Assembly: GCF_006345805.1 (NCBI RefSeq)
Contig: NC_043002.1
Span: 44,640,001 to 44,704,000, forward strand
Reading direction: 5' to 3'
DNA length: 64,000 nt
Origin: Octopus sinensis
Taxonomy: Eukaryota
Part shown: piece by piece, positions 1,561 through 63,322 of the stretch
Layout: every line of letters begins with the position of its first letter
How positions within the stretch are numbered: position 1 is the first letter of the stretch
Program-made: the position numbers and the translations under genes
Notes under the pieces: model-generated
Seen by the model: only the letters and a program-made list of their open reading frames with translations
Database searches by the model: none
Told to the model about the DNA's origin: nothing

Positions 1561-1564
1561 GAGG

Positions 1565-24477: not shown

Positions 24478-25022
24478 TAGGCAATATAAATGCACGCAGC
24501 CTAGTGTAGTCTTCGAAACCGGATCACCTACTCAATGACTTCAGGTCACTAGCATTGTTGTCGTGGCTATCAGTGAGATAAGACTTCCAATCCTAAGAGA
24601 CGCTGAGGAAAATCGTCGCAACCGACGTACTCGCGGCGAGACTGGCTCTGGACCAATTCTTCAAGGCTAAGTACGAAGAATGCATTCAGAGAGTTAAGGC
24701 GCGTGCTATGAGAAACAAGGAAACGGAAGCATCTCAATGGAGTCGAGTAGTAGAGAAGCAACGTGGAAACAAGCCACAATTCGGTATTTAGCCGCATGGG
24801 AATCGACCCCAGCAGATATGTGTAGCATTTCAGAAGCGCTTCGCTCAACTGTATGGATAGAATCGCAGTCCGGAATATAGGATGGACTTCAGTTCCTACC
24901 TCGACGGCATGCGACAACTTTCGGCAAAGAAAGTGGAACATTGCGAAATGCCCATAACAGCCACTGAAATAGGATTTTATGATGGGCTGCACGAGGGTAA
25001 ACCGCTTGGTTTGGATGGTCTG
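24478..25022 (+). mobile_element. Tx1/L1-clade ORF2 remnant (APE N-terminus fused by deletion to the linker and RT start)
   Basis: NINARSL...HLLNDFRSL...VAISEIRL (APE start), then DFSSYLDGMRQLSAKK...MPITATEI...GKPLGLDGL. Similar to NFSAYLDGQPKLSEEK at about 476-520. Confidence 0.75.
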
Positions 25023-43883: not shown

Positions 43884-44830
43884 TGTATGTATATGTATGT
43901 ATATATGTATATATATAAATATGTATGTATGTATATATGTATATATGTATATATGTATATTTGTATGTATGTAAGTATGCTTATGCACAAATGTATATCT
44001 AAACATATGTGTGTCTGTTTGTGTGAGTGTGTGTGAGAGTGGTGACTGTATGTGGGTGTGCAATGTGTTTGAGTGTGTATGTGCGTTAGATATTGTTTCC
44101 AAACATCATAACATTTACTTTCCACTTCTTTCAGTCATTGGATTACAACCATTGATTCTAAATGAAAAACAAAATAGATTTCACCACACATTTATGAAAA
44201 CAGATTTCAATTGTGCAAACATTTCAAAGCGCAACCTAAATTTCAATTGTGCGAACATTTCAAAGTGAGCGAAAATACAGGCAACATATCTTTGAAAAAA
44301 CTGTAAAGCGTTATCTGTATTCAAGTTCTTTGAGATAAATTTTAGATTCGTTACTTAATAATTTTCGATTTTAGCTTCCTAGTATTTAGAGAGTCCGATT
44401 TTAATCGGTTTTTTTTCTTGTGGAATACGTCCAAAAAAAAAAAGAAACGAAGATCAAGTATAATAGAAGATATTTCATTCTCTTATATTTTTCTTCGTCC
44501 GTTACTATTATTCCATACAATTCAATGAAATGTTTCCTTTTAAAATAATTATCACTAAAACTTTAGACGAAACATAAGTTTACATACTTGTAAAAGAAGC
44601 TTGAAGAAAGCAGAATAATTACACACACACACAGACATATATGAATACGTGGATGGATGCATGAATATATATTTACATATGTGTGTACGTGTGTGCGTGT
44701 ATGTCTGCGTGTGTTTGCATTTATATGTAAGTATCCATGTATATATATTTATCAATATCTTAAAATGCCTACAATATAACCTCCAGCTGCAAAATCTCTA
44801 CACATTTAACTACATATATATATAGACACG

Positions 44831-44935
<105 letters not shown>

Positions 44936-45068
44936 GCTAGTGGCGCAATGGGACAGTGGTTACGACATATGAATATGTTATATACGATTTACAACAATGT
45001 TGGCCTCCAGGTGCAAAATCTCTACACATTCACACACATTTAACTACATATATATATATATATATATA

Positions 45069-45127
<59 letters not shown>

Positions 45128-45133
45128 ATATAT

Positions 45134-45179
<46 letters not shown>

Positions 45180-45201
45180 CATACATACATATATATATAT
45201 A

Positions 45202-45545
45202 TGGTAGTGGTGCAATGGGACAGTGGTTACGACAGCGGAGTTGCGGTCGTGGGATTGCGGTTTCGATTCCCAGACCGGTTGTTGTGTTTATTGAGCGAAA
45301 ACATCTAAAGGTCCACGAGGCAGGTGGTGGTGGCGAACCCTGCTGTACTCTTTCAACACGACTTTCTTTCACTCTTCCTTTCTGTTTCAAAGGGACAGCC
45401 TTGTCACTAAATCAATCTCACTGAATCCCACTGAGAATTACATTAAGGGTACACGTACCTGCGGAGTTCTCAGCCAGGAGCAGGCTGTTCCGTTGATCAG
45501 ATCAACTGGAAACCTAGTCGTCGCAACCCACGGAGTGCCATGACA
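45202..45545 (+). mobile_element. tRNA-headed SINE (family C-like)
   Basis: GGTGCAATGGGACAGTGGTTA...GGTTTCGATTCCCAGACC...TTGAGCGAAAACATCT. Confidence 0.65.
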
Positions 45546-45870
45546 CATATGTGTGTGTGTGTCTCCGTGTAGTTTTATATATGCGTACATATACACATAC
45601 ATGTATGTATACATACACCCACTCACACACAGACATATATATATATATATGTGTGTGTGTGGTGTGTGTGTGTGTGAGAGTGTGTGTCGGTTGCCCAAAA
45701 GTTGCCCGGCAATAAATCAAAATTCCATAAATGTTCAATTTTATTTATTCATTCCAATTATGAATGTTTAATAATTTAACGTTAAATTAACGGGTTTTTT
45801 TTCACTTTCACAACATTTGTCTATTTATTAACGAAGTTTCATATAAAATGATGTTTTTGTTATAATTTGG

Positions 45871-45916
45871 GAATTAGATGGTTGTGATTTACTATGAGAT
45901 GAATTTTCGCAAACGC

Positions 45917-45947
<31 letters not shown>

Positions 45948-46034
45948 GTGTGTGTTATATATACATATATATATGTATATATATATATATGTATATATAT
46001 AGTATATATATATATATATATTATATATATATAT

Positions 46035-46067
<33 letters not shown>

Positions 46068-46083
46068 GTATATATATGTATAT

Positions 46084-46132
<49 letters not shown>

Positions 46133-46474
46133 GTATATATATGTATATATATATATCCGTAATAATGAAGGGTGAATTAATTAATTTGGAATAATTATCA
46201 ATTACACCAAGTAGTCTTCGGCATGTAAAAGCCTCATTCGAGGAGAATTTAAGTAATACTAAGCAATAAAAGGTTTAGCAACGAATTGCCTTACCACATA
46301 CCCAATTTAGAAATAGCAGTCAAAGAGTTATAGCTATTTCTTCTACTAAAAAGGGAGATCTCAGTAAAAACAGCAATTGGAAGGCAGACACAAACAGGTA
46401 AGAGAGAATGAATTGACGGCAATCTATCATACAATTTTAAGTTATCTACGGACGTACGTTTCGAAATCACGTTT

Positions 46475-46528
<54 letters not shown>

Positions 46529-46531
46529 ATA

Positions 46532-46571
<40 letters not shown>

Positions 46572-46615
46572 TATATTATATATAATATATATATATATGT
46601 ATATATATGTATATA

Positions 46616-46650
<35 letters not shown>

Positions 46651-46745
46651 GCTATATCTATATATAACACACACGCGCGCATGCATATATATATATAGAT
46701 ATAGCGTTTTCCAAAATTCATCGCAGTAAATCAAAACCATTTAAT

Positions 46746-46748
<3 letters not shown>
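45871..46748. repeat. About 95-bp inverted repeats (45871-45965 / 46655-46748) enclosing (TA)n blocks and a 310-bp core
   Basis: GATGGTTGTGATTTACT..GATGAATTTTCGCAAACGCTATAT vs ATATAGCGTTTTCCAAAATTCATCGCAGTAAATCAAAACCAT. Confidence 0.8.
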
Positions 46749-46815
<67 letters not shown>

Positions 46816-47008
46816 CACCTACCTATATAACTTCATACATCGAACGAACGTGTCTGATAACATAGCGCTATAAAATATATCGACTGTATTTAAAAGGTCA
46901 ATTATTAACATATCTCACTAGCTGAAACGTTAAAAGAATAAATGTAGAGGTGAATGTAATTATGGAACATCAGTAAAAATCTTGGCAGTTTTCTTATCAT
47001 CGCGCGCC

Positions 47009-47354
47009 GAGCGACGAGCTGACAGAATCATTACCGCGTTGGAGAATCTGCATCGCGGCATTTCTTCGACATCTTTACTTTCTAGTTCATATTCCGCCAG
47101 TATTGATTTTGTCTTTTATTATTTCGTGTGTTACTACAATAACCATCAGTTGAGCACTGGCTCCATGTAGTCGACGAGTTCCCGCCCCCAAAATTTCAGG
47201 TCTTGTGCCTGGAATAAAGAAGATTATTATTACAAGATTATTACAAGAGAACAAACAGAATTGTTAGCACGCTGGACACAAAAGAAAAAGCTTAGTGGCA
47301 CTCCGACCGTGTTTAGGGTCGGTGTTAAAATTTCACCGAAGTCAATTTTGTCAT
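47009..47354 (+). mobile_element. Two SINE family A copies; the second is 3'-truncated against the LINE array
   Basis: Heads at 47009 and about 47255. The second copy fuses to array unit 7 at about 47355. Confidence 0.75.
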
Positions 47355-47982
47355 CAGCCATGCTCTTTTCAGCTCTGGGGGCACTTTGCCAACTCGCACT
47401 CTGGCCGCGCGTTTTCCAAAGTACGATGGCAAAAGCACCCATTCTCCCGATCTTATTGCCTACGTTGAGTGCTTAATTGCTTCCTCTTCTTATACAAAGC
47501 GCACCTCCACAGTAGCTAATTACTCCCTCTTGTTATAAATGTATTTAGTCTTTTTATATTCTTCAAACATTCTTTAATAGCCTCTATTGTCTCTATTTCT
47601 ATTTTCCTTGTTGCTATCTTCATTGACTTATGTATCACCGTCCTTTTCATTATATTGGTTGTTAGTTCTACAGGCGGCGTTAATTTCAGTGTATTTCCAT
47701 CTCTTTCCAGCAACTTTTCGCATTCCTTCATTTTCGTGGTTTAACCTTTATTTCACGTACCTCTATTGTTTCCACGTCTATCCCTTTTCCAGTTGCAGCC
47801 GCATTATTCAGGCCACCTTCTGGCGCTTTCTCCATTTTTCCCACAATGGGAAAAAAGAACAATTCAAAATAACAACAGCAACAATTTGAATAGTAACAAG
47901 CAATCAGACAAATATTTAACACTATGACTTACGTCTAACGCGACAAAAATAACATCGTTATGAACAATTCAAACCGCGTGTG
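47355..47982 (-). mobile_element. Array unit 7: family C ORF1-only element, 5' part only, decayed
   Basis: ORFs MGKMEKAPEGG...AAATGKGID and LKLTPPVELTTNIMKRTVI match unit 5. Confidence 0.85.
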
Positions 47983-47992
47983 CATGTGATGC

Positions 47993-48982
47993 TCTTCGTT
48001 TCTTTATTTCGGCACTATGGCCACAACAGGGGGGATACTACAAAGACAGGCACAATGACACAGAGGGGACAAAAAAAATAAAACGAATGAAAATGAGATG
48101 TTATATAAAAATCAAAAAAGAAACTGGCTGCATGGACCCCACTCCCATGTAGTACCATTTGAACGTTTATATCAATTATTTACAAAAGTTCTATTTTATT
48201 GTTTCTTCTTAATCATCGTTTTTCTTCTCTTATTTTTTAAATGGAACAATTTTACGTTTTTTTTCTCCTTTTTAATATCTCATGAAAGGTTCTAAATCTT
48301 TTTGTTCCACTACTGGTGACAATTCTTTGAACTCCACCATCAGTCCTGGCGGGTCAATCCCTCTTCCACACATGTCTTTTACTTTGTTGTAAGTGTCCTT
48401 GTCTACCACGATGGCCTTCACATTCTCGGAATACACATCCGTGGGCAAATTTACTCTTATAATATCTTTAAACTTTGATACTTTCTTTTCAGTTTTTTTG
48501 TTTTTTTTTTTTTTGCTTTTCGCGTACGTCACAAAATTCCATCGACATTTTTCTTTTCTTTTTTGTTTTTACTTTCCCTGCTCCACTCTTGGTACCTTCT
48601 CCTTTTCTCCTTCTATTCTGATCAGTCTCTGCAGTTGCCTCCTTATGCAATTCCTCCTCGAACGCTCCTTCAAATTCCTTTTCGCTTTCTTTATCCATCA
48701 CCATTTTGTCTTCCTTCCTTGTGGCCTCCTTCACAACCTCCTTTTCTAACTCTTCTTTCTTCTTTTCCTGCTGCTCTGACGGAGAGCTCACTCTCCTACT
48801 TCTATCCCTCCTCCGTTACTTTCTCCCTTATATCCACCTGTACCACCTGGTCCATGCTCTCCTGCATCTCTATCTGCTCTATTTGTTGTTCCCTCTGGGA
48901 GAACCTCGACTTCATTTGGGCTTTTTTTTTCCCACATGTTTAACATATAGGCGGCCTGCCTTCCACAACCACTCTCACAGTG
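47993..48982 (-). mobile_element. Array unit 6: 5'-truncated family C-like element
   Basis: Starts mid-ORF at VRVVVEGRPPIC. C-terminus ...AIVVDKDTYNKVKDMCG...DLEPFMRY*, then 3' UTR and AATAAA. Confidence 0.85.
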
Positions 48983-48993
48983 CAATATGACAC

Positions 48994-50806
48994 TCGTATT
49001 TCTTTATTTGGCACTACGGCCACAGCACAGAGAGGATACTACAAGAACAGACACAATACCACAGTGGGGACACAAAACATAAAACAAATGAAAATGAGAT
49101 GTTATATAAAAATGAAAAATGAAATGGCTGCATGGGCCCCACTCCTCATACAGTAGTATTTGAACGTTATATAAGATATTTACAATCGTTCTACTTTTCT
49201 TGTTTTTTTTCTTAATCATCGGTTTTCCTCCTTTTTTAAAAATGGAACAATTTTACTTTTTTTTAACTTTTTTTTTAACAAAGCAATTTTACTTTTTTTC
49301 CTTTTTAATATTTCATGAATGGTTCTAAATCTTTTAGTTCTTCTAATGGTGGCAATTCTTTGAACTCAGCCATCACTCCTGGCGGGTGAATCCCGCTTCC
49401 ACACATGACTTTTACTTTGTTGTAAGTGTCCTTGTCCACAACGATGGCATTCACATTCTCGGAATACACATCCGTGGTTAACTTTACTCCTATGATATGT
49501 TTGAATTCTAAAACTTTCCTTTCAGTGTCTTTGCTTTTCGCGTACGTCAAAAATCCCATCGAAATTTTCCTTATTTGTTTTTTCCTGTTCCACTCCTGGT
49601 ACCTTCTTTTCTTCCTCCACTCTGAACAGTCCCTCGTACAGTTGCAATCCTGAATCTCTTTCCTCCGCTGGAACAACCGGTGTCTTCACGACTGTCTCCT
49701 CCTTATGCAACTCTTCCTCGAACACCTTTTCAATTTCCTTTTCACTTTCTTTATCCACCACTATTTTGTCTTCCTTCCTTCTGGTCACAACCTCCATTTC
49801 CGCCTCTTCTTTCTTCTTTTTCTGCTGCTTTCATGGAGAGCTCACTCTTCCACTTTTTTTTCTTTTTACACCGTGAAATCCTCCTCCGTTGCTTTCTCTT
49901 TATCTCGACCTGTACCACCTGGTCCGTACTCTCCTGCCTTTCCGTCTGCTCTATTTGTTGTTCTCTCTGGGGGCACCTAACCTTCATGTGGCCTTTCTCC
50001 CTACAGGCAAAACACAGAGACGGTCTGCTCCCTACCACCTCTCTCAATCTTAAATCATCGGGCAGCACTATCTTTTCAACAATTCAGTTTAGGTCCTCCG
50101 CTGTTGCTTGGACGGTCACCTATATTCCGTATCCCCAGTAGTTTATCCTTTCTGTCCTTGTAGACTTCAGTATCTTGGCCTCCTCTTTCATATTGAACAT
50201 TATGGCTGTCATCAGCCATGTTTCTTTGAGTTCCGAGGGCACTTTGCCAACTCGCACTCTGGTCAAACGTTTGCCACAATTCAATTGCAGAGGCACCCAT
50301 TCCTCCGATCTTATTGCCTCCGTGGAGTGCTTAATTGCTTCCTCTTCTGATGTAAAGCGCACGTCCACAGTAGTGTACTTTCTCTTTCTTGTTATAAATA
50401 TGGTTAATTTCTTAATACTTTTTAAACACTCTTCAATCGCCTCAAGTTTCGCTATTTCTATCTTCCTTGTTGCTATCTTCATCGTCTTAAATATCACCGT
50501 CCTTTTCGTTACATTTGTTGTTAATTCCACAGGCGGCGTTAATTTCAATGTATCTCCTTCATTTTTCGTGGTTCAACTCTTATTTCACGCACTTCCAGCG
50601 TTTCTCGTCTATCCCTTTTCCAGTTGCAGCTGCATATCTGTGGCCACCTGCTGGCGTTTTCTCTGTTTTTCCCATAATGGGGAAAAAACAATTCAAAATA
50701 ACAATAGCAACAATTTGAACAGCAACGTTCAATCAAACAAATATATAACACTATGACTTGCGTCTAATACGGCAACAACTCTTATGAACAACTCAAACCG
50801 CCTGTG
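48994..50806 (-). mobile_element. Array unit 5: full-length family C element, frameshifted ORF1
   Basis: ORF pieces 50120-50548, 49751-50068 (CFACREKGHMKVRC knuckle) and 49305-49676 (...DLEPFMKY*). Confidence 0.88.
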
Positions 50807-50817
50807 CAATATGACGC

Positions 50818-52419
50818 TCTTCTTTTTCTTTATTACCCACGAGGAGCCACACAGAGGGGGGACACTACAAACATTGGGGACATAAAACATCACGATTACA
50901 AAGAATGAAAGATGAATTTTGAAAATGATATTATGAAAGTGATGCTAACCGGCCCCATCCGCTTGCATCACTTACCTGTCCTTTAGTTGTTAATCCCACA
51001 CAAATGCTCCTTGTTCAGTTCCGATACAAAATCCTTCCATCTCCATCCTTTTTTCAAACGTCTCTTCCAAATCCCTCATGATTTTTTCAACCATTCTCAC
51101 TTCATTTACTTCCCAATCCTCCCTTTCACACATTACCATAAACTCGTCCATTCGTTCTTTTCCAATTACTGCATACCTGATCGTTCCTCTCTCACACCAT
51201 TGATACTCTTCCATTTTCTTTTTAATCTTTTCTTTTCCCGTCATACATACAATGTTTGGCATGGGTTCATTTTTTGTGCCTTGGTTGTGTGTGTCTTTTC
51301 TTTTCTGTTTTCTTGTTGGAGGGGAGCGGGTGGGTTCACTGTCTGCAGGGAGAGGGTGGGACTCAGAGGGTGTGATTGGTGCTGGGGGTGGATTGGGGTT
51401 CCGTGTTGTTTTCTTTTCCTCTTTTTCCTGGCTTCTTCCCATTCTTGTGAATTTTCTTCTTCTGTTGTCTCCTTCTCCTCTGGTTTCTGCTCCTTTTCCG
51501 CCTCTCTTTGTGGCTCCGCACCCATTTCTTTCTCTGGGGAGGACAGTTAGCTCTTATGTGGCCCCTCAGGACACACTTGTAAAAACGTGGAGTCTGCCCT
51601 CCACCCACATTCTCATGATTACGCCTCCCAATCTGATGCTTTCTGTTAAGGTCTCCAGTACATCATCTTCTGCTTGTACATTCAGATCCAGTGCTGCGCC
51701 CCTCCAGCCCTCGGTCTTTACCGTGGTATGGAGGATGTCCACTTCATCCTCATGACCGCTAATTATAGCCGCCACAATCCACTCGGCTTCGACGTTTGGG
51801 GGTATTCCCTCGACCCATATTCTGGTAATTTTCCTATTTAAGTATGAGGGCAAAAGGAATACCCTCTCGGATTTCACTGCTTTCGCCGCCATCCTCCTTG
51901 CTATATTCTCACTCTTGAACTGTACTACCACAGTACCATAGCTTGTACCTCTCGTCAGAAATATTATTTCCTCTTCTGTTCTTCTCAGAGCCTTTTCTAT
52001 CCACTCCATATTCACCACTTCGATCTTTCTCTTTCCGTTTGCGTAGACCCTGTATGTAATGGTTCTTTTCCCATACCATTCTCTGCGCTTTGGTGGCGGT
52101 GCTAATTCCACCTCACCGCCGTCCTTCTTAATAAACTTTTGGTAACTTGGCAGCTTGGCTAAGTCCAACTCTCTTCCGATTTTTTAACCTAATTTCTGGT
52201 CCATTCTCCTCACCGCTTCCTCCAATTCCTCCTCAGACGTAGACAAGTCCGATAGGGTTTCGAATCCTCTAGCCGTCTCTCCCATCAGGGAGGGGCCGTC
52301 CTTGTCTGTCTCAACACAGACAGACTAAACCTCGCGCGACCGTACAACAAAAACCGTTTAACAAAATTTACGTGTAACGCAGTAACAAGGAAAAAAATTA
52401 ACTCACGATGAATAAGTCG
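50818..52419 (-). mobile_element. Array unit 4: full-length family A' element, frameshifted ORF1
   Basis: ORF pieces 51566-52168 and 50990-51442. ATG at 52285. Confidence 0.88.
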
Positions 52420-52430
52420 CAATATGACAC

Positions 52431-54079
52431 GCTTCTTGATTCTTTATTACCCACGAGGGGCCACACAGAGGGGACACTACAAACATTGAGGACATAAAAC
52501 ATCATAATTACAAGAATGAAAGATGGATTTTGAAAATGATATTATGAAAGTGATGCTAACGGCCCCATCCGCTGGCATCACTTACCTGTCCTTTAGTTGT
52601 TAATCCCACACAAATGTTCCTTGTTCCGTTCCTATACAAAATCCTTCCATCTCCATCCTTTTTTCAAACGTCTCTTCCAAATCCCTCATGCATTTTTCAA
52701 CCATTCTCACTTCACTTACTTCCCAATTCTCCCTTTCACACATTTCCATAAACTCGTCCATTCGTCCTTTTCCAATTACTGCATACCTGATCTTTCCTCT
52801 GTCACACCATTGATACTCTTCCATTTTCTTTTTAATCTTTTCTTTCCCCGTCATACATAGAATGTTTGGCCTGGGTTCATTTTTTGTGTCTTGGTTTTGT
52901 GTGTCTTTTCTTTTCTGTTTTCTTGTTGGAGGGGAGCGGGTGGGTTCACTGTCTGCAGGGATAGGGTGGGACTCAGAGGGTGTGGGTGGTGTTGGGGTGG
53001 ATTGGGGTTCCATGTTGTTTTCTTTTCCTCTTATTCTCCTCTTCCTCTTTTTCCTGGCTTCTTCCCATTCTTGTGAATTTTCTTCCTCCTCCACTGACTC
53101 CTTCTCTGGTTTCTGTTCCTTTTCCGTCTGTCTTTGTGGCTCGCAATCCATTCTTTCTCAGGGGGAGGGCATTTAGCTCTTATGTGGATCCTCAGGCCAC
53201 ATTTGTAACAACGAGGAGCTCTGCCCTCCACCCACACTCTCATGATTACGTCTCCCAATCTGATGTTTTCTGCTAGGTCCACCAGTACATCATCCTCTGC
53301 CTGCACATTCATTTCCAGTGTCACGCCACTCCATCCATCGGTCTTTACCGAGACATGGAGGATGTCCACTTCATCCTCGTGGCCGCTGATTATAGCCGCC
53401 ACAATCCACTCGGCTTCGACGTTTGGGGTATTCCCTCGACCCGTATTCTGGTAATTTTTCTATTTAAATATGTGGGCAAAAGGAATACCCTCTCGGATTT
53501 CACCGCCCTCGCCGCCATCTTCCTTGCTGTATTCTCACTTTTGAACTGTACTACTACAGTACCATATTTTGAACCTCTAGTCAGAAAATTAATGTCCTCT
53601 TCGGTTCTTCTTAGCGGAAAATTAATGTCTTCTTCGGTTCTTCTATCCACTCCATATTCACCACTTCTATCTTTCTCTTTCCGCTTGTATGTGATGGTCC
53701 TTTTCTCGTACCATTCTTTTCTCTTTGGCGGCGGTGCCAGTTCCACCTCACCGCTGTCCTTCTTAATATACTTCTGGAAACTTGGCAGCCTGGCCAAGTC
53801 CACCCCTCTCTCCTCCGACTTCTTAGTCACTCCGGCATAGGTATAACCCAGTTTCTGGTCCATTTTCCTCACTGCTTCTTCCAGTTCCTCCTCAGACGTA
53901 GACAAGTCTGATAGAGACTCAAAAACTCTTGCCGTCTCTCCCATCAGGGAGGGGCCGTCCTTGTCTGTCTCAACACAGACAGACTAAACCTCGCGCGACC
54001 GTACAACAAAAAGCGTTTAACAAAATTTACATGTAACGCAGTAACATGGAAAAAAAATTAACTCACGATGAATAAGTCG
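52431..54079 (-). mobile_element. Array unit 3: full-length A/A' chimeric element, frameshifted ORF1
   Basis: The 5' half nearly matches unit 2 and the 3' end matches unit 4. ORF pieces 53390-53944 and 52600-53151. Confidence 0.88.
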
Positions 54080-54090
54080 CAATATGACAC

Positions 54091-55720
54091 TGTTCTGACT
54101 TTTTATTGCCCACAAGGGGCGATGCAGAAGGGACATTACAAAACATTGGGGACATAGAACATTATAATTAAATTTATGAAGAATGAATTATTAAATGAAA
54201 AAATGATAATATGAAAGCGATGCTAACGGCCCCATCCGTCAGCATCACTTACCTGTCCTTTGGTTTTCACTGTCACTTAAATGTTCATTCCCAATACGAA
54301 GACCATCCATATCCATTCTTACTCCGAAATACCCCTCCGTATTTTCCACGAATTCATCGCTCATTCTTGTGTCTTTCAACTCCCAATTCTCCCTTTCACA
54401 CCTCAACATAAACTCATCTATTCTCTTCTTTTCAATCACTGCATACCTGGTCTCACCTATTTCATACCATTTATACTCCTCCGTTACCCTTTTAATTTCT
54501 TTCTCGTCTGTCATAGTATAAATGTTCGGTATGGATTCGTTTTCTATGTATTGTTTTTGCGTGTTCTTTTTTTGTTTTCTTGTTGGAGGGGAGCGGGTGG
54601 GCTCACTGTCTGCAGGGATAGGGTGGGACTCAGAGGGTGTGGGTGGAGTTGGGGTGGATTGTTGTTCCGTGTTGTTTCCTTTTCCTCTCATTCTCCTCTT
54701 CCTCGTTTTCCCAGCTTCTTTCCATTCTTGTGAATTTTCTTCGTCTTCTACTGTCTCCTTCTCCTCTGGTTTCTGTTCTTTTTCCTCCTCTCTTTGTGGC
54801 TCGGAATCCATTTCTTTCACTGGAGGAGGGCAGTAGGCTCTTATGTGACCCCTCAGGCCACACTTGTAACAACGTGGAGCTCTGCCTTCCACCCACACTC
54901 TCATGATTACGTCTCCCAACCTGATGTTTTCTGCTAGGTCCACCAGTACATCATCCTCTGCCTGCACATTCATTTCCAGTGTCACGCCACTCCATCCATC
55001 GGTCTTTACCGAGACATGGAGGATGTCCACTTCATCCTCGTGGCCGCTGATTATAGCCGCCACAATCCACTCGGCTTCGACGTTTGGGGGTATTCCCTCG
55101 ACCCTTATTCTGGTAAATTTTCTATTTAAATATGTGGGCAAAAGGAATACCCTCTCGGATTTCACCGCCCTCGCCGCCATCTTCCTTGCTGTATTCACAC
55201 TTTTGAACTGTACTACTACAGTACCATATTTTGAACCTCTAGTCAGAAAATTAATTTCCCCTTCGGTTCTTCTTAGCGCCTCCTCTATCCACTCCATATT
55301 CACCACTTCTATCTTTCTCTTTCCGCTTGTATGTGATGGTCCTTTTCTCGTACCATTCTTTTCTCTTTGGCGGCGGTGCCAGTTCCACCTCACCGCTGTC
55401 CTTCTTAATATACTTCTGGAAACTTGGCAGCTTGGCCAAGTCCACCCCTCTCTCCTCCGCCTTCTTAGTCACTCCGGCATAGGTATAACCCAGTTTCTGG
55501 TCCATTTTCCTCACTGCTTCTTCCAGTTCCTCCTCAGACGTAGACAAGTCTGATAGATACTCAAAAACTCTTGTCGTCTCCCCCATCAGGGAGGGGCCGT
55601 CCTTGTCTGTCTCAACACAGACAGACTAAACCTCGCGCGACCGTACAACAAAAACCGTTTAACAAAATTTACGTGTAACGTAGTAACAAGGAAAAAAATT
55701 AACTCACGATGAATAAGTCG
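54091..55720 (-). mobile_element. Array unit 2: full-length family A element, ORF1 with one early frameshift
   Basis: ATG at 55586 (ORF 55251-55586), shifting near 55325 into ORF 54245-55393, which contains CYKCGLRGHIRAYC. Confidence 0.9.
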
Positions 55721-55731
55721 CAATATGACAC

Positions 55732-57515
55732 TGTTCTATTTCTTTATTACCCACAAAGGGGCCACGAAGAGGGGGACATTACAAGACGGGACATGGGGTA
55801 CATAAAATAAAAATAAAATATGAAGTAAAAGATGAATTATAAGTAATGAGATGGAACGGCTTACGAACCCCCAACTCGCAGTTCCGTTTAAAATACAAAT
55901 GTACATTTCATATATTCCAATACAATTTTACAGTTACATATATTCCAGTTAAAAGTACAATAATTTTACAATTTTACATGTTAACATTACATATATTCCT
56001 GTTCAAAATACAACTTTACATCATATAATTTTACAATTAACAATTCTAATTCTTTTACATTAGACGTTCGTCCGTCATATAATCTAATAGGTCCATTTGG
56101 TCTATTACATCTGGTAATTTATCATACCGTACATAATGCGTTATATGAATAGCATTAAATATCTTTTTTAATTTTGTGTATGTCTCTTTGTCTATAATGA
56201 CGCCTTTTATATCGTCACCATACAGTTTTGGGTTCACCTTCACCCTGACCAACCCTTTCTTACCTACAAGTCTCTTTTCCACTTCTGTATTCTTGATATA
56301 CATCACAACTGCCTTCAGGTTTTTTCCTGTAGGCCTTCTTCCATATTTACACGATTCCAATTGTTCGTTCACTCTTGTCTCCCATTCTTGTTCAAACTCT
56401 GTCCTTGGCCGCTCTCTCGCCTTCTCTTTTACTTCCTGTTCTTTGTATGTTCTCTCTTCTCTCTCTTCTGCTATCTTGCTTTTGATTTTTTTCTTTTTTA
56501 GATCCTTCGGTGGTGATTCCACCCTTGATCTCTTCCTATCTTCTGTTTTTTCCTCTTCTGCACTTGCTCGTTCTTCCTCATTTAACTGCTCCTCCATTCG
56601 TGTTTCCTCCGCTTTCGCTTCCTCCACACACGCATCTTTACACTCCTCTATCACAACCTCTGGTGCTTTTGTTTTTTCCCGCGGGCACACATCCTTCATG
56701 TGGCCCCTCGATTTACAATTATAGCAGATAGGGGGTCTTCCCTCTACCACAACTCGGAGCCGTGTCTCGTCAGGGTAGACCAACTCCTCCGGGATGTTGT
56801 ACAGGTCTCGCACGGTTATGTGTGCTAGAACCTGCACCGTATATCCCCACCACTTCACCTCTGCTGACTTCTCCACCTTCAGTACCTCCACATCATCCTT
56901 GCAGTTAAACAGCACTGCCGCCAGCAACCTTTCCATATTAAATTCGGGTGAGATTCTATTGATTCTCATCCTCACTGCTCTCCTTCCGCAGTAACTTGGT
57001 AGCAAAGTCCACTTATCCGATTTCAAAATTCTTGTTGCATTCTTTTTTGCCTCATTTTCTGTTTCAAAATATACCACCACCGTGGCATACTTCCTTCCTC
57101 TTTTGAAAAATGTGGGTTCACCCTCAATTTCCTTCAGACACCTTTCTACTTCTTCCATTTCCGCTACTTCAATTTTTTTCGACTCCACACACCACGTCCT
57201 GTACGTTATAGTACGCTTCTCTGCACTGCTTTCCTCCTCCTCGGACGGTGTGACTATCACGCAGTCACCCTCCCTCTTTAAACTGTCGAAATACTTTTGC
57301 AAAGTCTTCTGTTCGACCACCACCTCCTCCATCTCCAGCTCACCAGCAACCAGGCCTCTGCCTGCCGCTCGCGCGTAAGTCTGCTCTTGCATTTTCAAGA
57401 AAAAAACTATTCCACGTCCTCCAACGAACTCGAACTCACAACCCCCTCACTCGAAACAAACACACCAGAATAACTCCAAATAACCTATTTTCAAAAGACT
57501 GGAAGCCTAAGCCTT
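55732..57515 (-). mobile_element. Array unit 1: full-length family B element with intact ORF1
   Basis: About 120-bp 5' UTR, an uninterrupted ORF, about 320-bp 3' UTR and AATAAA. No ORF2. Confidence 0.92.
56055..57398 (-). CDS. LINE ORF1/gag-like nucleic-acid-binding protein (RRM-like region, CX2CX4HX4C knuckle, charged region, unassigned C-terminal domain); first ATG at 57392
   Basis: 447-codon open frame with RGRKYATVVVYFETENEAKK (RNP-like) and CYNCKSRGHMKDVC. Confidence 0.85.
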   Translation of the reverse strand: MKMQEQTYARAAGRGLVAGELEMEEVVVEQKTLQKYFDSLKREGDCVIVTPSEEEESSAEKRTITYRTWCVESKKIEVAEMEEVERCLKEIEGEPTFFKRGRKYATVVVYFETENEAKKNATRILKSDKWTLLPSYCGRRAVRMRINRISPEFNMERLLAAVLFNCKDDVEVLKVEKSAEVKWWGYTVQVLAHITVRDLYNIPEELVYPDETRLRVVVEGRPPICYNCKSRGHMKDVCPREKTKAPEVVIEECKDACVEEAKAEETRMEEQLNEEERASAEEEKTEDRKRSRVESPPKDLKKKKIKSKIAEEREERTYKEQEVKEKARERPRTEFEQEWETRVNEQLESCKYGRRPTGKNLKAVVMYIKNTEVEKRLVGKKGLVRVKVNPKLYGDDIKGVIIDKETYTKLKKIFNAIHITHYVRYDKLPDVIDQMDLLDYMTDERLM

Positions 57516-57879
57516 CAATATGACACTGTTCTATTTCTTTATTACCCACAAAGGGGCCACGAAGAGGGGGACATTACAAGACGGGACATGGGGTACATAA
57601 AGTAAAAATAAAATATGAAGTAAAAGATGAATTATAAGTAATGAGATGGAACGGCTTACGAACCCCCAACTCGCAGTTCCGTTTAAAATACAAATGTACA
57701 TTTCATATATTCCAATACAATTTTACAGTTACATATATTCCAGTTCAAAGTACAATAATTTTACAATTTTACATGTTAACATTACATATATTCCTGTTCA
57801 AAATACAACTTTACATCATACAATTTTACAATTAACAATTCTAATTCTTTTACATTAGACGCTCGTCCGTCATATAATC
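57516..57879 (-). mobile_element. Array unit 0: 3'-terminal 364 bp of a family B element, fused to the Gypsy integrase
   Basis: Matches 55721-56084 with 4 substitutions by my count. Confidence 0.92.
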
Positions 57880-60395
57880 CCATATTTGAACATTTTAAAA
57901 AATACTGCGTTACTTATATTGAAATAGTTTGTATTATTAAAATTATTCTTCTGCATTTGTTGTTTCCTTCTTGGTAACAATTTATCAAATACTGATTGTA
58001 CCTTTCTGGCGAACATTAATTCAGTGGGTGACATACCTACATTTGTGTTGGGGTTTGGCGTTATTCTATAAACGTGTAAACCTTTTGTCAGTGTATTATC
58101 TACCAATGATTCGTTTCTGGTTTTCCTCAACGCTCTTTTAAACGTATCTACGAACCTCTCCGCAAGTCCAGTTGACCTCGGATGATATGACGGTGTAGTG
58201 TTATGTTCCATTTGATGCGTCTTATAAAAATCTTTGAACTCTTTTGCTGTAAATTGTGTGCCATTATCTGACACTATAGTATCCGGCACACCAAAATGTG
58301 CAAGTGTTTCATCCAAACATTCAATAGCTACTTTCGTAGGTGGTTTTCTGCACCTACAAATTTCAGTCCATTTTGTGTAGCTATCTACCACTACCAGATG
58401 ATATACCCCGTTTAGTGGTGCTGCGAAATCTATGTGTAGCCTAGACCACGGTATATCTATCTTTGGCTATGGTTGAATATTTACTGGAGGGTCCTAAGCT
58501 GCCACGGCGCATCTCCTGCATGCTTTCCCTAGTTTCTCGATATCTTTATCTTTACTAGGCCAGTAAATATAACTCCTTATAATGAGCTTCATCCTTACAA
58601 TTCCAGGATATCCTACATGAAATTCTGCTAGCATTCTATTTTGTAGTACAACGGGTATCACAACCTTCTGAGCGTACATCAACACATTGTCACACATCGA
58701 ATAGTATTTCGAACATGTGTTACGCTCAGTGACAATTTTTTTGTAATTGTCTCATTCATTATTATTTTTTTCATTTTCTTAATAAACGCATCTTTTTCTG
58801 CTTTACTTTTTATCTCTTCCAATGGAATTGGTAAATTCCAGCCCAACATTTCAGAGAATATTTTTTAATTCAATTTCTGATTTTAACACTGTTATTACTG
58901 TATCTTCTAGCGGTTCGTTATACTTCGGGATTAATCGCGACAGCCCGTCGGCATGTCCCAATTTCTCCGAAAGAAAAAAATTCCAATTTGAAATCATAAT
59001 TTAATATGGTAGTCCCCCAGAGCTGTAATCGATTGGCTGTGTGTGTGGGAACACCTTTTCTGATACATAATTTGTTAGCAGTGAACGGTGATCTGTCTGT
59101 AATGTAAACTTTCTGCAGTGCTAGAAGTTATGAAATTTCTTCACTGCAAAAATAATGGCTTGTGCCTCTTTCTCTATCTGGTTGTAATTTTTTTTCCAAC
59201 GATAGTAATGTACGTGACGCATGTGCGATCGGTTTTACGTTACCATTTTCCAACTTATGTAAAATTACTGCTCCGATCCCAGACTCTTTAGCAGCTGATG
59301 CTACAGTTATTTTTAGTTTCAGATCAAAATTTGCTAGAGATAGCTCTGACGTTAACATTTTAAAAAATGTCTTCGAATGCTTTTTAGCATTCGTCAACCC
59401 AACACCATTTCACATCTTTTATCAGTAGTTTGTTTAACTCATGCATTCTTGGAAGATACATTTGATAGTAATTCGCAAGACCTAGAAAAGCATGTAAGGC
59501 TATTTTAGTCGGAGGAGGCATATCTTTAATTGCATCTGCCCTCGACGGGTCCGGTCATCGTCTATTCCTGTCGATAATTTGTCCTAAATACTAAAGTTCA
59601 GATAAGAAAAATTCCTCACTCAGTGTGAAACCCTAATCTCTCATTTTCTCAAAAACACACTTTACGTGCTCAACAGGCTAATCACTATGTACACTTTTAA
59701 ATAATATATCATCCAGGTATGGAATTACGAATTCACTATGAGCCAACACTGGATTCATAACCTATTGAAAATTGCAGGTGCGACTTTTATGCCGAAAGGA
59801 AATCCGTTAAACTTATAACCGTTGTGCGTGTTTATCGTTATCAGCTTGGAACATTCTTCGTCTACCTGCAGCAATAAATAAGCTTCCGATAAATCCAACT
59901 TAGAAAAGAGTTTGCCTCCATTAAGTTTGGCAAAATCTTCTATGGACTTGGTAACAGATAGTTATAAGTTTTCAGACATTCATCAAATCCCGCCGAAAAA
60001 TCAGCGCAGACCCTTAATTTGTTCTTTTTCTTACACACAGTTGGTGCTGCCCATTGCGAATAGTCTAATTTTTGTATTACACAAATGTTCTCAAGTCTTT
60101 TCAGTTCTTTTTCTATTTGATTTATTGCCGCAAAAGACACAGCTCTCTTTGGTTTAAAAACCGGAACGGTATTTTCTTTTAGTAAGATTTTCACTTTTAT
60201 TTTCGTACATGAGCCAAGTTCCTCTGAAAAATCATCAGGATACATTTTTTTTTAAAGTTCTTAGACGCCTTGTTCGAACTGGCGCGCGACGCATTCACAT
60301 TATTACAGAAAATACTTATGGGCAAATCCCACAAATTAAATGTCTCCATCCAATCTGTATTAAAGAGGTTCATAGTATTTTCTGATACCAGATGA
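57880..60395 (-). mobile_element. Decayed Ty3/Gypsy LTR retrotransposon pol (protease end, RT, RNase H, integrase), 3'-truncated
   Basis: YSQWAAPTV, LRVCADFS and PYLDDIL (RT); ASAAKESGIGAVILH...IAHASRTL (RNase H); HVGYPGIVRMK...YWP...CRRC and VVVDSYTKW...SDNGTQF...YHPRSTGLAERFV (integrase). No LTRs identified. Confidence 0.92.
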
Positions 60396-62340: not shown

Positions 62341-63322
62341 TATATTTCTGACCAAGCTCCATCAGAACATATAAAAGCTAATCAGCATATCCACATTTAT
62401 ATAGACGAGTGAATTCGTATTTCCCTCCAACTTTACCATGTGCGTCACAAGGTAGTACTGCTGAAAAAGATTCGCAGTTTTGTTATCGGGGAGTGATTTA
62501 TAATTCCTGAAATATTATGTTGATAACGGAAATGAATTTTTATAATTCTGATCCTGAAACGCGTCCATAATGAATCGAAGACTGTTTGATTTCATTATTT
62601 TTCTTCTTTTTGCCTGTGTGAGTTACAAATATTGTTATCTGTGGAGACATTTTTGTAGAAAAAAGAAATATCAGTCTTTTGGCTGCTATTTCTAAAACTT
62701 TCGGTATGTGGTCAAGCAACTTGTGGTCAAACCCTTAATTATTGTTATAATTATATATAAAAAAAACTCTTTGTATAACTTTTTACCGAATATGGTTCTT
62801 TTCCATACCGAAAACTACTAGGTGAAATTTGTTAATTTTATTAGATTAATAATTTTTTACCCCATATCTGTAATGATTATTTCACTCCCCGATAACAAAA
62901 CTGCGAATCGTTTTCTGCAGTACTATCTTGTGACGCACATGGTAAAGTTGGAGGGAAATACGAATTCACTCGTCTATATAAATGTGGATATGCTGATTAG
63001 CTTTTATATGTTCTGATGGCGCTTGGTCAGAAATATAAGGGATAAGTTTTCCTAGCATTTCCAGATTTATAATTCTCGAAATATTATGTTGATAACAGAA
63101 AGGAATTTTTATAATTCTGATCCTGAAACGCGTCCATAATGAATCGAAGACTGTTTGATTTCATTATTTTTCTTCTTTTTGCCTGTGTGAGTTACAAATA
63201 TTGTTATCTGTGGGGACATATTTTTGTAGAAAAAAGAAATATCAGTCTTTTGGCTGCTATTTCTAGAACTTTAGGTATGTGGTCAAACAACTTGTTGCTA
63301 AACCCTTAATTATTGTTATAAT
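62341..63322. repeat. Rearranged duplication A-B-x-A(inverted)-B
   Basis: 62341-62497 is the near reverse complement of 62882-63038. 62497-62752 is directly repeated at about 63066-63322. Confidence 0.9.

What the first reader, a model, noticed from the sequence alone, without database searches (positions are those of the whole stretch)
47355..57879. Head-to-tail array of eight ORF1-only ('half-LINE') retroelements from at least three diverged families
Seen: eight consecutive minus-strand units (complete ones 1.6-1.8 kb). Each complete unit has a short 5' UTR, one ORF1/gag-like gene (RRM-like region plus CCHC knuckle), a 3' UTR and AATAAA. There is no endonuclease or RT anywhere and no spacer between units. 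Families A, B and C are only distantly similar at protein level, and one unit is 5'-truncated, so simple tandem duplication of one unit cannot explain the array. Known: HAL1 (half-L1) elements encode only ORF1, Drosophila HeT-A is gag-only and forms head-to-tail arrays, and Tx1-clade LINEs are often target-specific. Inference: non-autonomous Tx1-derived elements repeatedly insert at one site or at each other's 3' ends, using an RT supplied in trans. I know of no such system described in cephalopods.
Basis: partly seen in the sequence, partly recalled or inferred. Interest (0 to 1): 0.92.

Follow-up and report, generated by a model that had tools for sequence, protein, structure and literature searches.

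The report
Array of ORF1-only LINE retrotransposons
A 10.5-kb stretch of this octopus-type genome holds eight head-to-tail copies of a jumping gene that kept its RNA-binding gene but lost its copying enzyme, and it apparently borrows that enzyme from full-length relatives that form the same kind of arrays.

Summary
Window 47349-57879 (minus strand) holds eight abutting units of three families: C', C, B1-B3 and A1-A3. ORF1 identity between families is 31-39%. There is no spacer, no poly(A) and no endonuclease or RT remnant. The ORF1 product is a tandem-RRM domain plus a CCHC knuckle.

Homologues are abundant and, where a source was looked up (20 top hits), come only from octopods. In O. vulgaris, O. 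sinensis and Argonauta the same ORF1 type sits upstream of an ORF2 with APE endonuclease, RT and zf-RVT. That ORF2 matches human L1 ORF2p at E=2e-71. ORF2-less and full-length elements share a conserved ~45-nt 3'-terminal block.

Solitary ORF2-less copies of 1.6-1.7 kb with 11-12-nt target-site duplications exist in two species. ORF2-less elements form two deep clades, and their ORF1 shows dN/dS of 0.11-0.24. Mixed head-to-tail arrays also occur elsewhere: L008 has one ORF1-only unit, three full-length elements and the start of a fifth unit.

How the arrays form is inferred. Repeated insertion at a resident copy's boundary is favoured over RT template jumping, and later recombination is evident. 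Tx1-clade membership was not testable. This is a new variant of a known kind (HAL1- or HeT-A-like).

The parts
57516..57879 (-). Unit C': a 5'-truncated C-type copy holding the last ~9 codons and the 3' UTR. It is joined upstream to a degenerate Gypsy-type integrase sequence.
   Evidence: 98.9% identical over 364 nt to 55721-56084. Junction read.
55721..57515 (-). Unit C: full-length ORF1-only element. It has a 5' UTR, an intact ORF1 at 56055-57392 (445 aa from the ATG) and a 334-nt 3' UTR ending AATAAAGAAATAGAACAGTGTCATATTG.
   Evidence: AF2 model of residues 30-262 has pLDDT 91.5 and matches tandem-RRM proteins. CCHC knuckle at aa 224-239.
54080..55720 (-). Unit B1: ORF1-only element of 1,641 bp. 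ORF1 is broken near the N-terminus by an 11-nt deletion shared with B2. The remaining 382-aa frame lies at 54245-55393.
52420..54079 (-). Unit B2: ORF1-only element of 1,660 bp with several frameshifts. It is a mosaic: the 5' ~900 nt is 97-100% identical to B1 and the 3' ~500 nt is ~95% identical to B3.
50807..52419 (-). Unit B3: ORF1-only element of 1,613 bp with a frameshift at the CCHC knuckle.
48983..50806 (-). Unit A1: ORF1-only element of 1,824 bp. ORF1 is interrupted by stops.
48003..48982 (-). Unit A2: an A-type copy lacking the 5' UTR and the N-terminal half of ORF1. It starts just before the knuckle and abuts the intact 3' end of A1.
47349..48002 (-). Unit A3: an A-type copy with a 5' UTR and the N-terminal ORF1 only. 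It is cut off at ...GGCTGATGACA. That point is 4 nt from the breakpoint of a permuted A-type copy in O. bimaculoides (L003).
50807..50870 (-). Example of the conserved 3'-terminal block plus junction (TTGTAGTGTCCCC..GTGGGTAATAAAGA..GTCATATTG). The same block lies at 57516-57579, 55721-55784, 54080-54143, 52420-52484, 48983-49045 and 48003-48065.
   Evidence: (D12). The block is shared with full-length elements in L001 and L008.
57880..60250 (-). Upstream flank: a degenerate Gypsy-type pol (RT, RNase H, integrase) with frameshifts, ending in the integrase C-terminal region where C' begins.
46830..47348 (-). Downstream flank: unrelated sequence leading into a (TA)n/(TG)n microsatellite at 44.6-46.8 kb. 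It may continue the integrase, but this is not significant.

Best explanation
The region is a head-to-tail array of ORF2-less (ORF1-only) non-LTR retrotransposons of the L1/Tx1 superfamily.

Each unit is 5' UTR, then ORF1 (tandem RRM, CCHC knuckle, basic linker and a small C-terminal domain), then a 3' UTR ending in a conserved ~45-nt block with AATAAA and no poly(A).

The units encode no endonuclease or RT, so they must be copied by target-primed reverse transcription using the ORF2 protein of related autonomous elements. I infer that this protein recognises the shared 3'-terminal block, as in a 'stringent' LINE/SINE partnership. Their own ORF1 has been kept under purifying selection, as in mammalian HAL1.

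Arrays arise because new copies, whether ORF1-only or full-length, are added end-to-end to resident copies. The favoured route is repeated insertion at the boundary or target-site duplication of a resident element. The arrays are then remodelled by recombination or gene conversion and decay into pseudogenes.

Shown: the anatomy, the LINE ancestry, the existence of autonomous relatives with the same 3' block, discrete mobilisation with TSDs, selection on ORF1, and the recurrence of mixed arrays.

Inferred: trans-mobilisation through the 3' block, and the array-building step.
For: Anatomy and junctions.

No ORF2 remnant in the array.

ORF1 fold: the AF2 model has pLDDT 91.5 and its top PDB matches are tandem-RRM proteins. 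The CCHC knuckle is seen.

Family size and taxonomy: 1,114 representatives at E<=1e-3 and 323 at E<=1e-10. The top hits are all from Octopus spp. or Argonauta.

Full-length relatives:
- L001 ORF2 carries Exo_endo_phos, RVT_1 and zf-RVT.
- It matches human L1 ORF2p at 2e-71 over residues 3-868.
- L008 and L009 are also full-length.

Shared 3' block in ORF1-only and full-length elements.

Solitary ORF1-only insertions with TSDs:
- L005: 1,605 bp, 12-nt TSD.
- L007: 1,736 bp, 11-nt TSD, intact 379-aa ORF.

Selection and phylogeny:
- ORF2-less elements form two deep clades, each with bootstrap 100.
- dN/dS is 0.11-0.24 between ORF2-less copies.

Arrays elsewhere:
- L001 has three full-length copies at a 5.28-kb period.
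- L008 has a B-type ORF1-only unit, three full-length elements of different subfamilies and the start of a fifth unit.
- L003 has an A|A junction.

Separate insertion at a resident 5' boundary: a 16-nt direct repeat flanks the L008 B-type unit, and the upstream DNA is not element-derived.

Junction fillers are shared within an array but differ between arrays, even for the same family.
Against: - No autonomous partner carrying the 3' block lies in this window. The ORF2 fragments at 42-1661 and 24597-25022 lack it. The partner is known only from other octopod genomes, and the window's species is unidentified.
- Trans-mobilisation has not been demonstrated.
- The 3' block shows no convincing conserved RNA structure.
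- Solitary copies show no common target sequence, so why arrays are so frequent is unexplained.
- The expected copy of the junction filler upstream of C' is only loosely similar.
- Only about ten loci were sampled, and three of them (L003, L004, L006) are gap-ridden.
- B1 and B2 share a frameshifting deletion, so part of the array is DNA-level duplication or conversion rather than insertion.
Confidence: 0.75

Rival explanations
1. The array, or blocks of it such as C'-C, was made in one or a few TPRT events. On reaching the 5' end of one template, or an internal point, the reverse transcriptase jumped to the 3' end of another co-packaged RNA of the same or a different family. This would produce a head-to-tail concatemer.
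For: - Junctions are precise: an intact 3' end is followed by a full or 5'-truncated next unit.
- C' and C are 98.9% identical, as expected for two RNAs from one source copied at once.
- Mixed families sit within one array.
- Template jumping and concatemers are documented for R2 (paper PMC11371274, listed).
- From general knowledge, chimeric U6-L1 retrocopies show that L1-type RT switches templates in vivo.
Against: - Each array has its own 9-16-nt filler repeated at all its junctions: window GTGTCATATTG at 7 junctions, L008 GAATACTCGTCAT at 3. Untemplated additions at jumps should differ from junction to junction.
- In L008 the B-type unit is individually flanked by a 16-nt duplication, so it was a separate insertion.
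- B units within the window differ by 9-16%, and B2 is a mosaic.
Confidence: 0.15
2. The ORF2-less units are not a propagating non-autonomous lineage. They are dead-on-arrival internal-deletion products of full-length LINEs, later amplified locally by unequal crossing-over.
For: - Most units are pseudogenes.
- B1 and B2 share a disabling deletion and B2 is a mosaic, which shows DNA-level exchange.
- Only about ten loci were sampled.
Against: - ORF2-less units of 1.6-1.8 kb recur in four ORF1 families and at least three species, always as complete ORF1 plus 3' UTR.
- Two are solitary with clean TSDs.
- They form two deep clades in which no sampled member has an ORF2.
- dN/dS is 0.11-0.24 within those clades.
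- Three families 31-39% identical cannot arise from one unit by crossing-over.
Confidence: 0.07
3. The units are a host tandem gene family, namely domesticated RRM-CCHC genes evolving by birth and death. They would not be transposable elements.
For: - The arrangement is tandem with diverged paralogues.
- One ORF is intact at 447 aa.
- ORF1 is under purifying selection.
- Databases annotate homologues as 'uncharacterized protein'.
Against: - Seven of the eight units are truncated or frameshifted.
- Intact 3' ends sit beside variable 5' ends.
- Dispersed copies carry TSDs, one of them inside a SINE-like sequence.
- The same ORF1 sits directly upstream of EN-RT ORF2s.
- The units have no introns.
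- Hundreds of diverged representatives exist.
Confidence: 0.02
4. The array is an assembly artefact, produced by collapsed or mis-joined repeats.
For: - Repeats of 1.6 kb are hard to assemble.
- L001 ends in an N gap, and the O. bimaculoides loci are full of gaps.
Against: - Units in the window differ by 9-60% from each other and there are no N runs, so they are individually distinguishable.
- Comparable arrays occur in independent gap-free assemblies of other species (L008).
Confidence: 0.01

Closest known systems
HAL1 ('half-L1') elements of mammals
   Same: They are non-autonomous derivatives of an L1-type LINE that keep a conserved ORF1, lack ORF2, and are mobilised in trans by the L1 machinery. 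Here ORF1 is likewise under purifying selection (dN/dS 0.11-0.24), and copies carry TSDs.
   Different: - The ORF1 type differs: tandem RRM plus CCHC rather than coiled-coil, RRM and CTD.
- These elements have no poly(A) tail.
- A conserved 3' block is shared with the partner, suggesting stringent 3'-end recognition.
- There are at least two deep ORF2-less clades.
- Copies are frequently arranged in head-to-tail arrays.
- The host is an invertebrate (octopod).
Drosophila HeT-A / TART / TAHRE telomeric arrays
   Same: A gag/ORF1-only element (HeT-A) depends on RT from relatives. Head-to-tail mixed arrays contain both non-autonomous and autonomous elements, and 5' truncations are common.
   Different: - The octopod arrays examined are chromosome-internal: L001 at 31.9 of 40.2 Mb and L008 at 71.0 of 109.7 Mb.
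- Junctions carry no oligo(A).
- The elements belong to the L1/Tx1 superfamily rather than Jockey.
- The elements also insert elsewhere with ordinary TSDs.
- Nothing suggests a telomere function.
Tandem R1 / 'double-insertion' TE dimers (McGurk & Barbash, bioRxiv 10.1101/158386; listed)
   Same: Tandem head-to-tail TE copies are generated when a second insertion re-uses the target or TSD of a resident copy. Such dimers can then expand by unequal exchange.
   Different: - Here up to eight units from several families and both autonomy classes are involved.
- No fixed genomic target such as the 28S rDNA is apparent.
- TSD re-use is inferred from array-specific junction fillers and one clean case, not proven.
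LINE/SINE pairs with shared 3' tails; R2 SIDEs (PMC3414825; listed)
   Same: Non-autonomous elements retain the 3' end of the autonomous partner, which the RT needs to start TPRT. They are derived by internal deletion of full-length elements.
   Different: - These elements retain a full protein-coding ORF1 under selection.
- They are 1.6-1.8 kb long.
- They have diversified into deep families.
Tx1-clade target-specific LINEs (Tx1L, Keno, Kibi, Koshi, Mutsu; from general knowledge)
   Same: They belong to the L1/Tx1 superfamily, with an APE+RT+zinc-finger ORF2 and an RRM+CCHC ORF1 (type I ORF1p), and they tend to insert into repeated targets.
   Different: - Clade membership was not tested here.
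- Solitary insertions show unrelated TSDs (GTTAGCACGCCG and TGCTGGGTTCG), so strict sequence specificity is not supported.

Membership tests
Non-LTR retrotransposon (LINE), L1/Tx1 superfamily | ORF2 with an N-terminal APE-type endonuclease, an RT and a C-terminal zinc-binding domain | tested here: met
   Met for full-length relatives, not for the window units themselves. L001 ORF2 has Exo_endo_phos, RVT_1 and zf-RVT and matches human L1 ORF2p at E=2e-71 against R2 at ~1e-24. L008 and L009 are the same. The window units have no ORF2.
Non-LTR retrotransposon (LINE), L1/Tx1 superfamily | ORF1 of type I (RRM(s) plus CCHC knuckle) | tested here: met
   AF2 model with pLDDT 91.5. Foldseek top hits are tandem-RRM proteins at E~1e-4, prob 1.0. 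The CCHC knuckle matches Pfam zf-CCHC weakly in the window ORFs (18.7 bits, below the 20.8-bit cut-off) and above the cut-off in homologues.
Non-LTR retrotransposon (LINE), L1/Tx1 superfamily | TPRT hallmarks: target-site duplications, fixed 3' ends and variable 5' truncation | tested here: met
   TSDs of 12 nt (L005), 11 nt (L007) and 16 nt (L008 B-type unit). 5'-truncated C' and A2 abut intact 3' ends.
Non-LTR retrotransposon (LINE), L1/Tx1 superfamily | 3' poly(A) or simple-repeat tail (typical of L1) | tested here: not met
   All copies end 6-22 nt after AATAAAG without poly(A).
Tx1 clade specifically | RT-domain phylogeny grouping with Tx1 reference elements | not testable with these tools
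   No Tx1 reference sequences were available. O. vulgaris repeat annotation lists 'L1-Tx1' families averaging ~5.4 kb (PMC13282606), which fits the 5.28-kb L001 element. That is an inference only.
Tx1 clade specifically | Sequence-specific target site | tested here: inconclusive
   Solitary TSDs are unrelated to each other. Array junction fillers share a loose YG(T)[CG]ATA-like core, but the sample is tiny.
HAL1-like ORF1-only non-autonomous LINE (functional class) | Complete ORF1, no ORF2, propagated as such | tested here: met
   Units of 1.6-1.8 kb in four ORF1 families and at least three species. Two deep all-ORF2-less clades. No ORF2 remnant.
HAL1-like ORF1-only non-autonomous LINE (functional class) | ORF1 under purifying selection | tested here: met
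   NG86 dN/dS of 0.11-0.24 for B-type and A-type pairs. Caveat: copies from unsampled full-length masters cannot be fully excluded.
HAL1-like ORF1-only non-autonomous LINE (functional class) | Mobilised in trans by the partner's ORF2p | not testable with these tools
   Only indirect evidence: the 3' block shared with autonomous elements and co-residence in one array (L008).
HeT-A-type telomeric retrotransposon array | Arrays located at chromosome ends, with oligo(A) at junctions | tested here: not met
   The L001 and L008 arrays are chromosome-internal. No A-tracts at junctions. The window's chromosomal position is unknown.
Penelope-like / retrozyme tandem elements | Hammerhead or other self-cleaving ribozyme in the repeat, and a GIY-YIG/RT ORF | tested here: not met
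   The Rfam E-value scan of 44-64 kb and the gathering scan of the whole window found no ribozyme. The associated ORF2 is an APE-RT.
LTR retrotransposon tandem (LTR-internal-LTR-internal) | Repeated segment acting as an LTR, with PBS/PPT and a gag of retroviral type | tested here: not met
   The 364-nt repeat flanking C is simply the C-type 3' UTR plus the last codons. No tRNA or PBS features were found. The relatives are LINEs.

The most novel reading that the evidence does not exclude
Octopods harbour ancient, diversified lineages of LINE elements that gave up ORF2 but kept a selected tandem-RRM/CCHC ORF1. Together with their autonomous partners they build chromosome-internal, mixed-family head-to-tail 'colonies' by re-using the target-site duplication at a resident copy's boundary. 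This would be a self-nesting strategy that confines insertions to existing TE DNA. The recurrent breakpoint X (window A3 and a circularly permuted copy in O. bimaculoides) would then point to an additional, undescribed step such as internal priming, RNA cleavage followed by template jumping, or a circular intermediate.
Probability: 0.3. Interest if true: 0.75.

Novelty: new variant of a known kind. Interest (0 to 1): 0.6.

Why it matters
ORF1-only LINE derivatives are known mainly from mammals (HAL1) and from Drosophila telomeres (HeT-A). This is an independent invertebrate case with three notable properties:
- deep diversification;
- measurable selection on ORF1;
- a partner identified by a shared 3' block.

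It therefore gives a second system for asking what ORF1 contributes in cis when RT is supplied in trans.

The frequent, non-telomeric, mixed-family head-to-tail arrays, which include autonomous members, bear on how LINEs seed tandem repeats and satellites, and on whether some LINEs preferentially land next to their relatives.

There is also a practical point for cephalopod genome annotation. These units are currently annotated as 'uncharacterized protein' genes or fused into chimeric gene models, and they inflate gene counts.

Tried and rejected
1. Word-indexed homology searches with the 447-aa ORF and with the domain alignment returned nothing, probably because too few 5-mers are shared. The exhaustive profile search solved this.
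2. Single-sequence AF2 of the whole C protein was useless, with pLDDT 37. The alignment-based model worked.
3. The ribozyme or structured-RNA idea (hammerhead or HDV-like at junctions, as in PLEs, retrozymes or R2) was rejected. There are no Rfam hits in the array, and RNAalifold finds only 2 pairs at -0.28 kcal/mol in the 3' block.
4. The LTR-like reading of the 364-nt repeat flanking C was rejected (see the membership test).
5. Empty-site test, asking whether the array interrupts one Gypsy integrase:
   - Pfam sees nothing across the joined flanks.
   - MAFFT puts the downstream flank in register with integrase homologues.
   - The HMM score gain is not significant, with 17 of 200 shuffles at least as good.
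   - No LTR pair brackets the array.
   - The test is inconclusive.
6. The possibility that the 16-nt repeat in L008 is the tail of a decayed upstream unit was rejected. The upstream 120 nt is no more similar to 3' UTRs than shuffles are.
7. Homology of the ORF1 C-terminal domain between ORF2-less and full-length elements is only pattern-level in MAFFT. BLAST is not significant, so it is not claimed.
8. The exact-sequence look-up of the window's C protein is not on record, so the source species was not identified.
9. O. bimaculoides loci L004 and L006 could not be used to judge ORF2 absence because of N gaps.

Full report
OBSERVATION

Self-BLAST of the region, the repeat finder and direct reading of the minus strand at each boundary resolve eight abutting units covering 47349-57879 exactly (10,531 bp).

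| Unit | Coordinates | Size | Note |
|---|---|---|---|
| C' | 57516-57879 | 364 bp | 5'-truncated |
| C | 55721-57515 | 1,795 bp | only intact ORF |
| B1 | 54080-55720 | 1,641 bp | frameshifted |
| B2 | 52420-54079 | 1,660 bp | frameshifted, mosaic |
| B3 | 50807-52419 | 1,613 bp | frameshifted |
| A1 | 48983-50806 | 1,824 bp | stops in ORF1 |
| A2 | 48003-48982 | 980 bp | starts mid-ORF, just before the CCHC knuckle |
| A3 | 47349-48002 | 654 bp | 5' part only |

All family-related sequence in the 64-kb window lies inside this interval. The three families share 31-39% protein identity over the N-terminal ~200 residues.

Each unit that has a 3' end finishes with a conserved block...TTGTAnTGTCCCC..GGCCCCTTGTGGGTAATAAAGA.., followed by about 20 nt ending GTCATATTG. 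The next unit's 5' end then follows immediately, with no poly(A) and no spacer. The block occurs 5 times against 0.16 expected by chance.

A tblastn search with a related ORF2 finds no endonuclease or RT remnant in the array. Only the C ORF (445 aa from its ATG) is intact. B1, B2, B3 and A1 carry frameshifts or stops.

WHAT THE PROTEIN IS

Pfam sees only a weak CCHC knuckle, and the PDB sequence search sees nothing. An exhaustive profile search with the conserved N-terminal domain found 1,114 cluster representatives at E<=1e-3 and 323 at E<=1e-10. Every named top hit is an uncharacterised protein of Octopus vulgaris, O. bimaculoides, O. sinensis or Argonauta hians. Some are chimeric gene models fused to WD40 or LDL-receptor domains.

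With a 42-sequence alignment, AlphaFold2 gives a confident model (pLDDT 91.5, pTM 0.76). Its best PDB matches are tandem-RRM proteins such as IMP3 RRM12, Prp24, hnRNP A1 UP1 and Sxl (E~1e-4, probability 1.0). The ORF therefore encodes two RRM-like domains, a CCHC knuckle, a basic low-complexity linker and a small C-terminal domain. This is the 'type I' ORF1p architecture known for L1/Tx1-type LINEs (general knowledge).

IT IS A LINE ORF1, AND AUTONOMOUS RELATIVES EXIST

Genomic context was retrieved for nine homologues.
- **L001 (O. vulgaris).** The homologous ORF1 is followed, with a short overlap, by a 1,132-aa ORF2 carrying Exo_endo_phos, RVT_1 and zf-RVT. This ORF2 aligns to human L1 ORF2p over residues 3-868 at E=2e-71, against about 1e-24 for R2 proteins.
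- **L008 (O. sinensis) and L009 (Argonauta hians).** The same ORF1+ORF2 organisation is present.
- **L002 (O. sinensis).** The same organisation is present in decayed form.

The family therefore belongs to the L1/Tx1 superfamily. Whether it is Tx1 proper could not be tested. A recent O. vulgaris repeat annotation lists 13 recently active 'L1-Tx1' families averaging about 5.4 kb per insertion (PMC13282606). That fits the 5.28-kb L001 unit, but the link is an inference.

ORF2-LESS ELEMENTS ARE A PROPAGATING CLASS, NOT RANDOM DELETIONS

- **L005 (O. sinensis, gap-free).** It holds a solitary 1,605-bp B-type unit (5' UTR, ORF1, 3' UTR). The unit is flanked by a 12-nt duplication, GTTAGCACGCCG, inside a SINE-like sequence.
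- **L007 (O. vulgaris).** It holds a solitary 1,736-bp unit of a fourth family with an intact 379-aa ORF1, the 3' block and an 11-nt duplication, TGCTGGGTTCG.
- **Tree.** In an ORF1 tree, ORF2-less elements form two deep clades, {L007, C, A} and {B family}. Each has bootstrap 100, and no sampled member has an ORF2. The B clade is weakly (62) sister to the autonomous clade.
- **Selection.** Between ORF2-less copies, dN/dS is 0.11-0.24. ORF1 was therefore under purifying selection while these lineages diversified.
- **Shared 3' end.** ORF2-less and full-length elements share the ~45-nt 3'-terminal block and little else in their UTRs. This is the pattern expected if the partner's RT recognises that end. 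No convincing RNA structure was found in the block, so only sequence conservation is claimed.

ARRAYS ARE A GENERAL HABIT OF THIS CLADE

- L001 holds three near-identical full-length copies at a 5.28-kb period and ends in an assembly gap.
- L008 (gap-free) holds a B-type ORF1-only unit, then three full-length elements of different subfamilies (ORF2 68-96% identical to L001), then the start of a fifth unit, all head-to-tail.
- L003 holds an A|A junction.
- L004 holds three units separated by N gaps.

About half of the loci sampled through ORF1 hits are arrays. The arrays with known coordinates are chromosome-internal.

HOW ARRAYS FORM (INFERENCE)

Three observations bear on the mechanism.

1. 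In L008 the B-type unit is flanked by a 16-nt direct repeat, GGATGTGATATAATGA. The DNA upstream of the first copy is no more similar to element 3' UTRs than shuffles are. The unit therefore entered by its own TPRT event, with its duplication ending exactly at the 5' terminus of the resident full-length element.

2. The 9-16 nt between AATAAAG(A) and the next unit's 5' end is the same at all junctions of one array, whatever families flank it:
   - The window has GTGTCATATTG at seven junctions, including the one before the 5'-truncated A2.
   - L008 has GAATACTCGTCAT at three junctions.
   - L001 has CACTGATAAG or CCCGATAG, with a similar CCCGACAG in the upstream flank.

   This filler differs between arrays even for the same family. 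That fits repeated use of one target whose duplication is regenerated at each insertion. Double insertions and tandem R1 elements form this way (paper 10.1101/158386, listed). It fits poorly with untemplated additions at RT template jumps. A short 3' transduction or a conserved 5'-terminal sequence is not excluded. The expected filler copy upstream of C' is only loosely recognisable.

3. DNA-level exchange has also acted. B2 is 97-100% identical to B1 over its first ~900 nt, including a shared frameshifting 11-nt deletion, and ~95% identical to B3 over its last ~500 nt.

I therefore favour sequential end-to-end insertion followed by recombination. Template-jump concatemers are a live alternative for blocks such as C'-C, which are 98.9% identical.

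FLANKS

Upstream, C' abuts the C-terminal region of a decayed Gypsy-type integrase. RT, RNase H and integrase frames lie at 60250-57880.

Downstream, A3 is cut off at ...GGCTGATGACA and is followed by unrelated DNA and a (TA)n/(TG)n tract. MAFFT places the downstream flank in register with integrase homologues. The score gain is not significant, with 17 of 200 shuffles at least as good, and no LTR pair brackets the array. Whether the whole array sits in one target site is therefore unresolved.

UNEXPLAINED

In O. bimaculoides (L003) an A-type unit occurs in circularly permuted order, [X->3' end][5' end->X], flanked by unrelated DNA. X lies 4 nt from the point where the window's A3 is cut off. 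Two loci in different assemblies sharing a breakpoint suggests a hotspot or a propagating permuted form. Candidate explanations are internal priming, RNA cleavage plus a template jump, or a circular intermediate. I could not discriminate between them.

COMPARISON AND VERDICT

Functionally the units work like HAL1: ORF1-only, ORF1 conserved, RT supplied in trans.
The arrays resemble HeT-A/TART arrays and tandem R1 dimers.

The system differs from those models in:
- ORF1 type;
- the absence of a poly(A) tail;
- the shared 3' block;
- the depth of diversification;
- the chromosome-internal, mixed-autonomy arrays.

The paper library searched contains no description of ORF1-only LINEs or LINE arrays in cephalopods.

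I rate this a new variant of a known kind and of moderate-to-good interest. Tx1 membership is untested, and the array-building mechanism is still inferred.

Noticed in passing
L003:8474-10386 (O. bimaculoides CM046615.1) and window 47349: An A-type unit is present in circularly permuted order, [X->3' end][5' end->X], with a 3-nt overlap (CAA) and unrelated flanks. Its breakpoint X lies 4 nt from where window unit A3 is truncated. This suggests a recurrent breakpoint or a propagating permuted form.
   Followed up: partly
window 57880-60250 (minus strand): A decayed Gypsy-type LTR-retrotransposon pol with RT, RNase H, integrase zinc finger and core, carrying multiple frameshifts. The closest proteins are 'K02A2.6-like' from Octopus sinensis at 53-60% identity. 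No LTRs were identified in the window.
   Followed up: partly
window 42-1661 (+), 2905-3210 (+), 10254-10739 (+), 24597-25022 (+): Fragments of LINE ORF2 (EN, RT and C-terminal regions), 28-41% identical to the L001 ORF2. The copy at 42-1661 lacks the conserved 3' block downstream, so it probably belongs to other LINE lineages.
   Followed up: partly
window 44600-46830: A large (TA)n/(TG)n microsatellite region with a repeated substructure: similar blocks at about 45020-45210, 45950-46190 and 46470-46660. It produces spurious sub-threshold miRNA matches in Rfam (mir-297, mir-3149 and others).
   Followed up: no
window 62543-62734 and 63112-63270 (minus strand); inverted partial copy at 46265-46351: A short dispersed repeat occurs twice in direct orientation about 570 bp apart. 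Both copies give the same translated string, ...SPQITIFVTHTGKKKKNNEIKQSSIHYGRVSGSEL. An inverted ~90-nt match lies near the microsatellite. It is probably a SINE- or MITE-like element.
   Followed up: no
L005:9400-9457 and 11063-11130 (O. sinensis): The solitary B-type element is inserted in a SINE-like sequence (...GGCGGCGTTGAGCTGGCAGAAACGTTAGCACGCCGGGCGAAATGCTTAGCAG...). A related motif appears downstream of the window array near 47180-47230.
   Followed up: no
Database proteins P0032 (1,041 aa) and P0092 (547 aa), O. bimaculoides: Gene models fuse the LINE ORF1 domain to WD40 or LDL-receptor class A domains. These are most likely annotation chimeras caused by intronic TE copies. Many ORF1 copies are annotated as ordinary 'uncharacterized protein' genes.
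   Followed up: no
L008:9540-9720 (O. sinensis): The N-terminal coding region of one full-length element's ORF1 contains a tandem array of a 27-nt unit (GGCGGTGTCGCCAAAGAAAAAAGAGGC, at least 5 copies). This is an internal expansion within ORF1.
   Followed up: no
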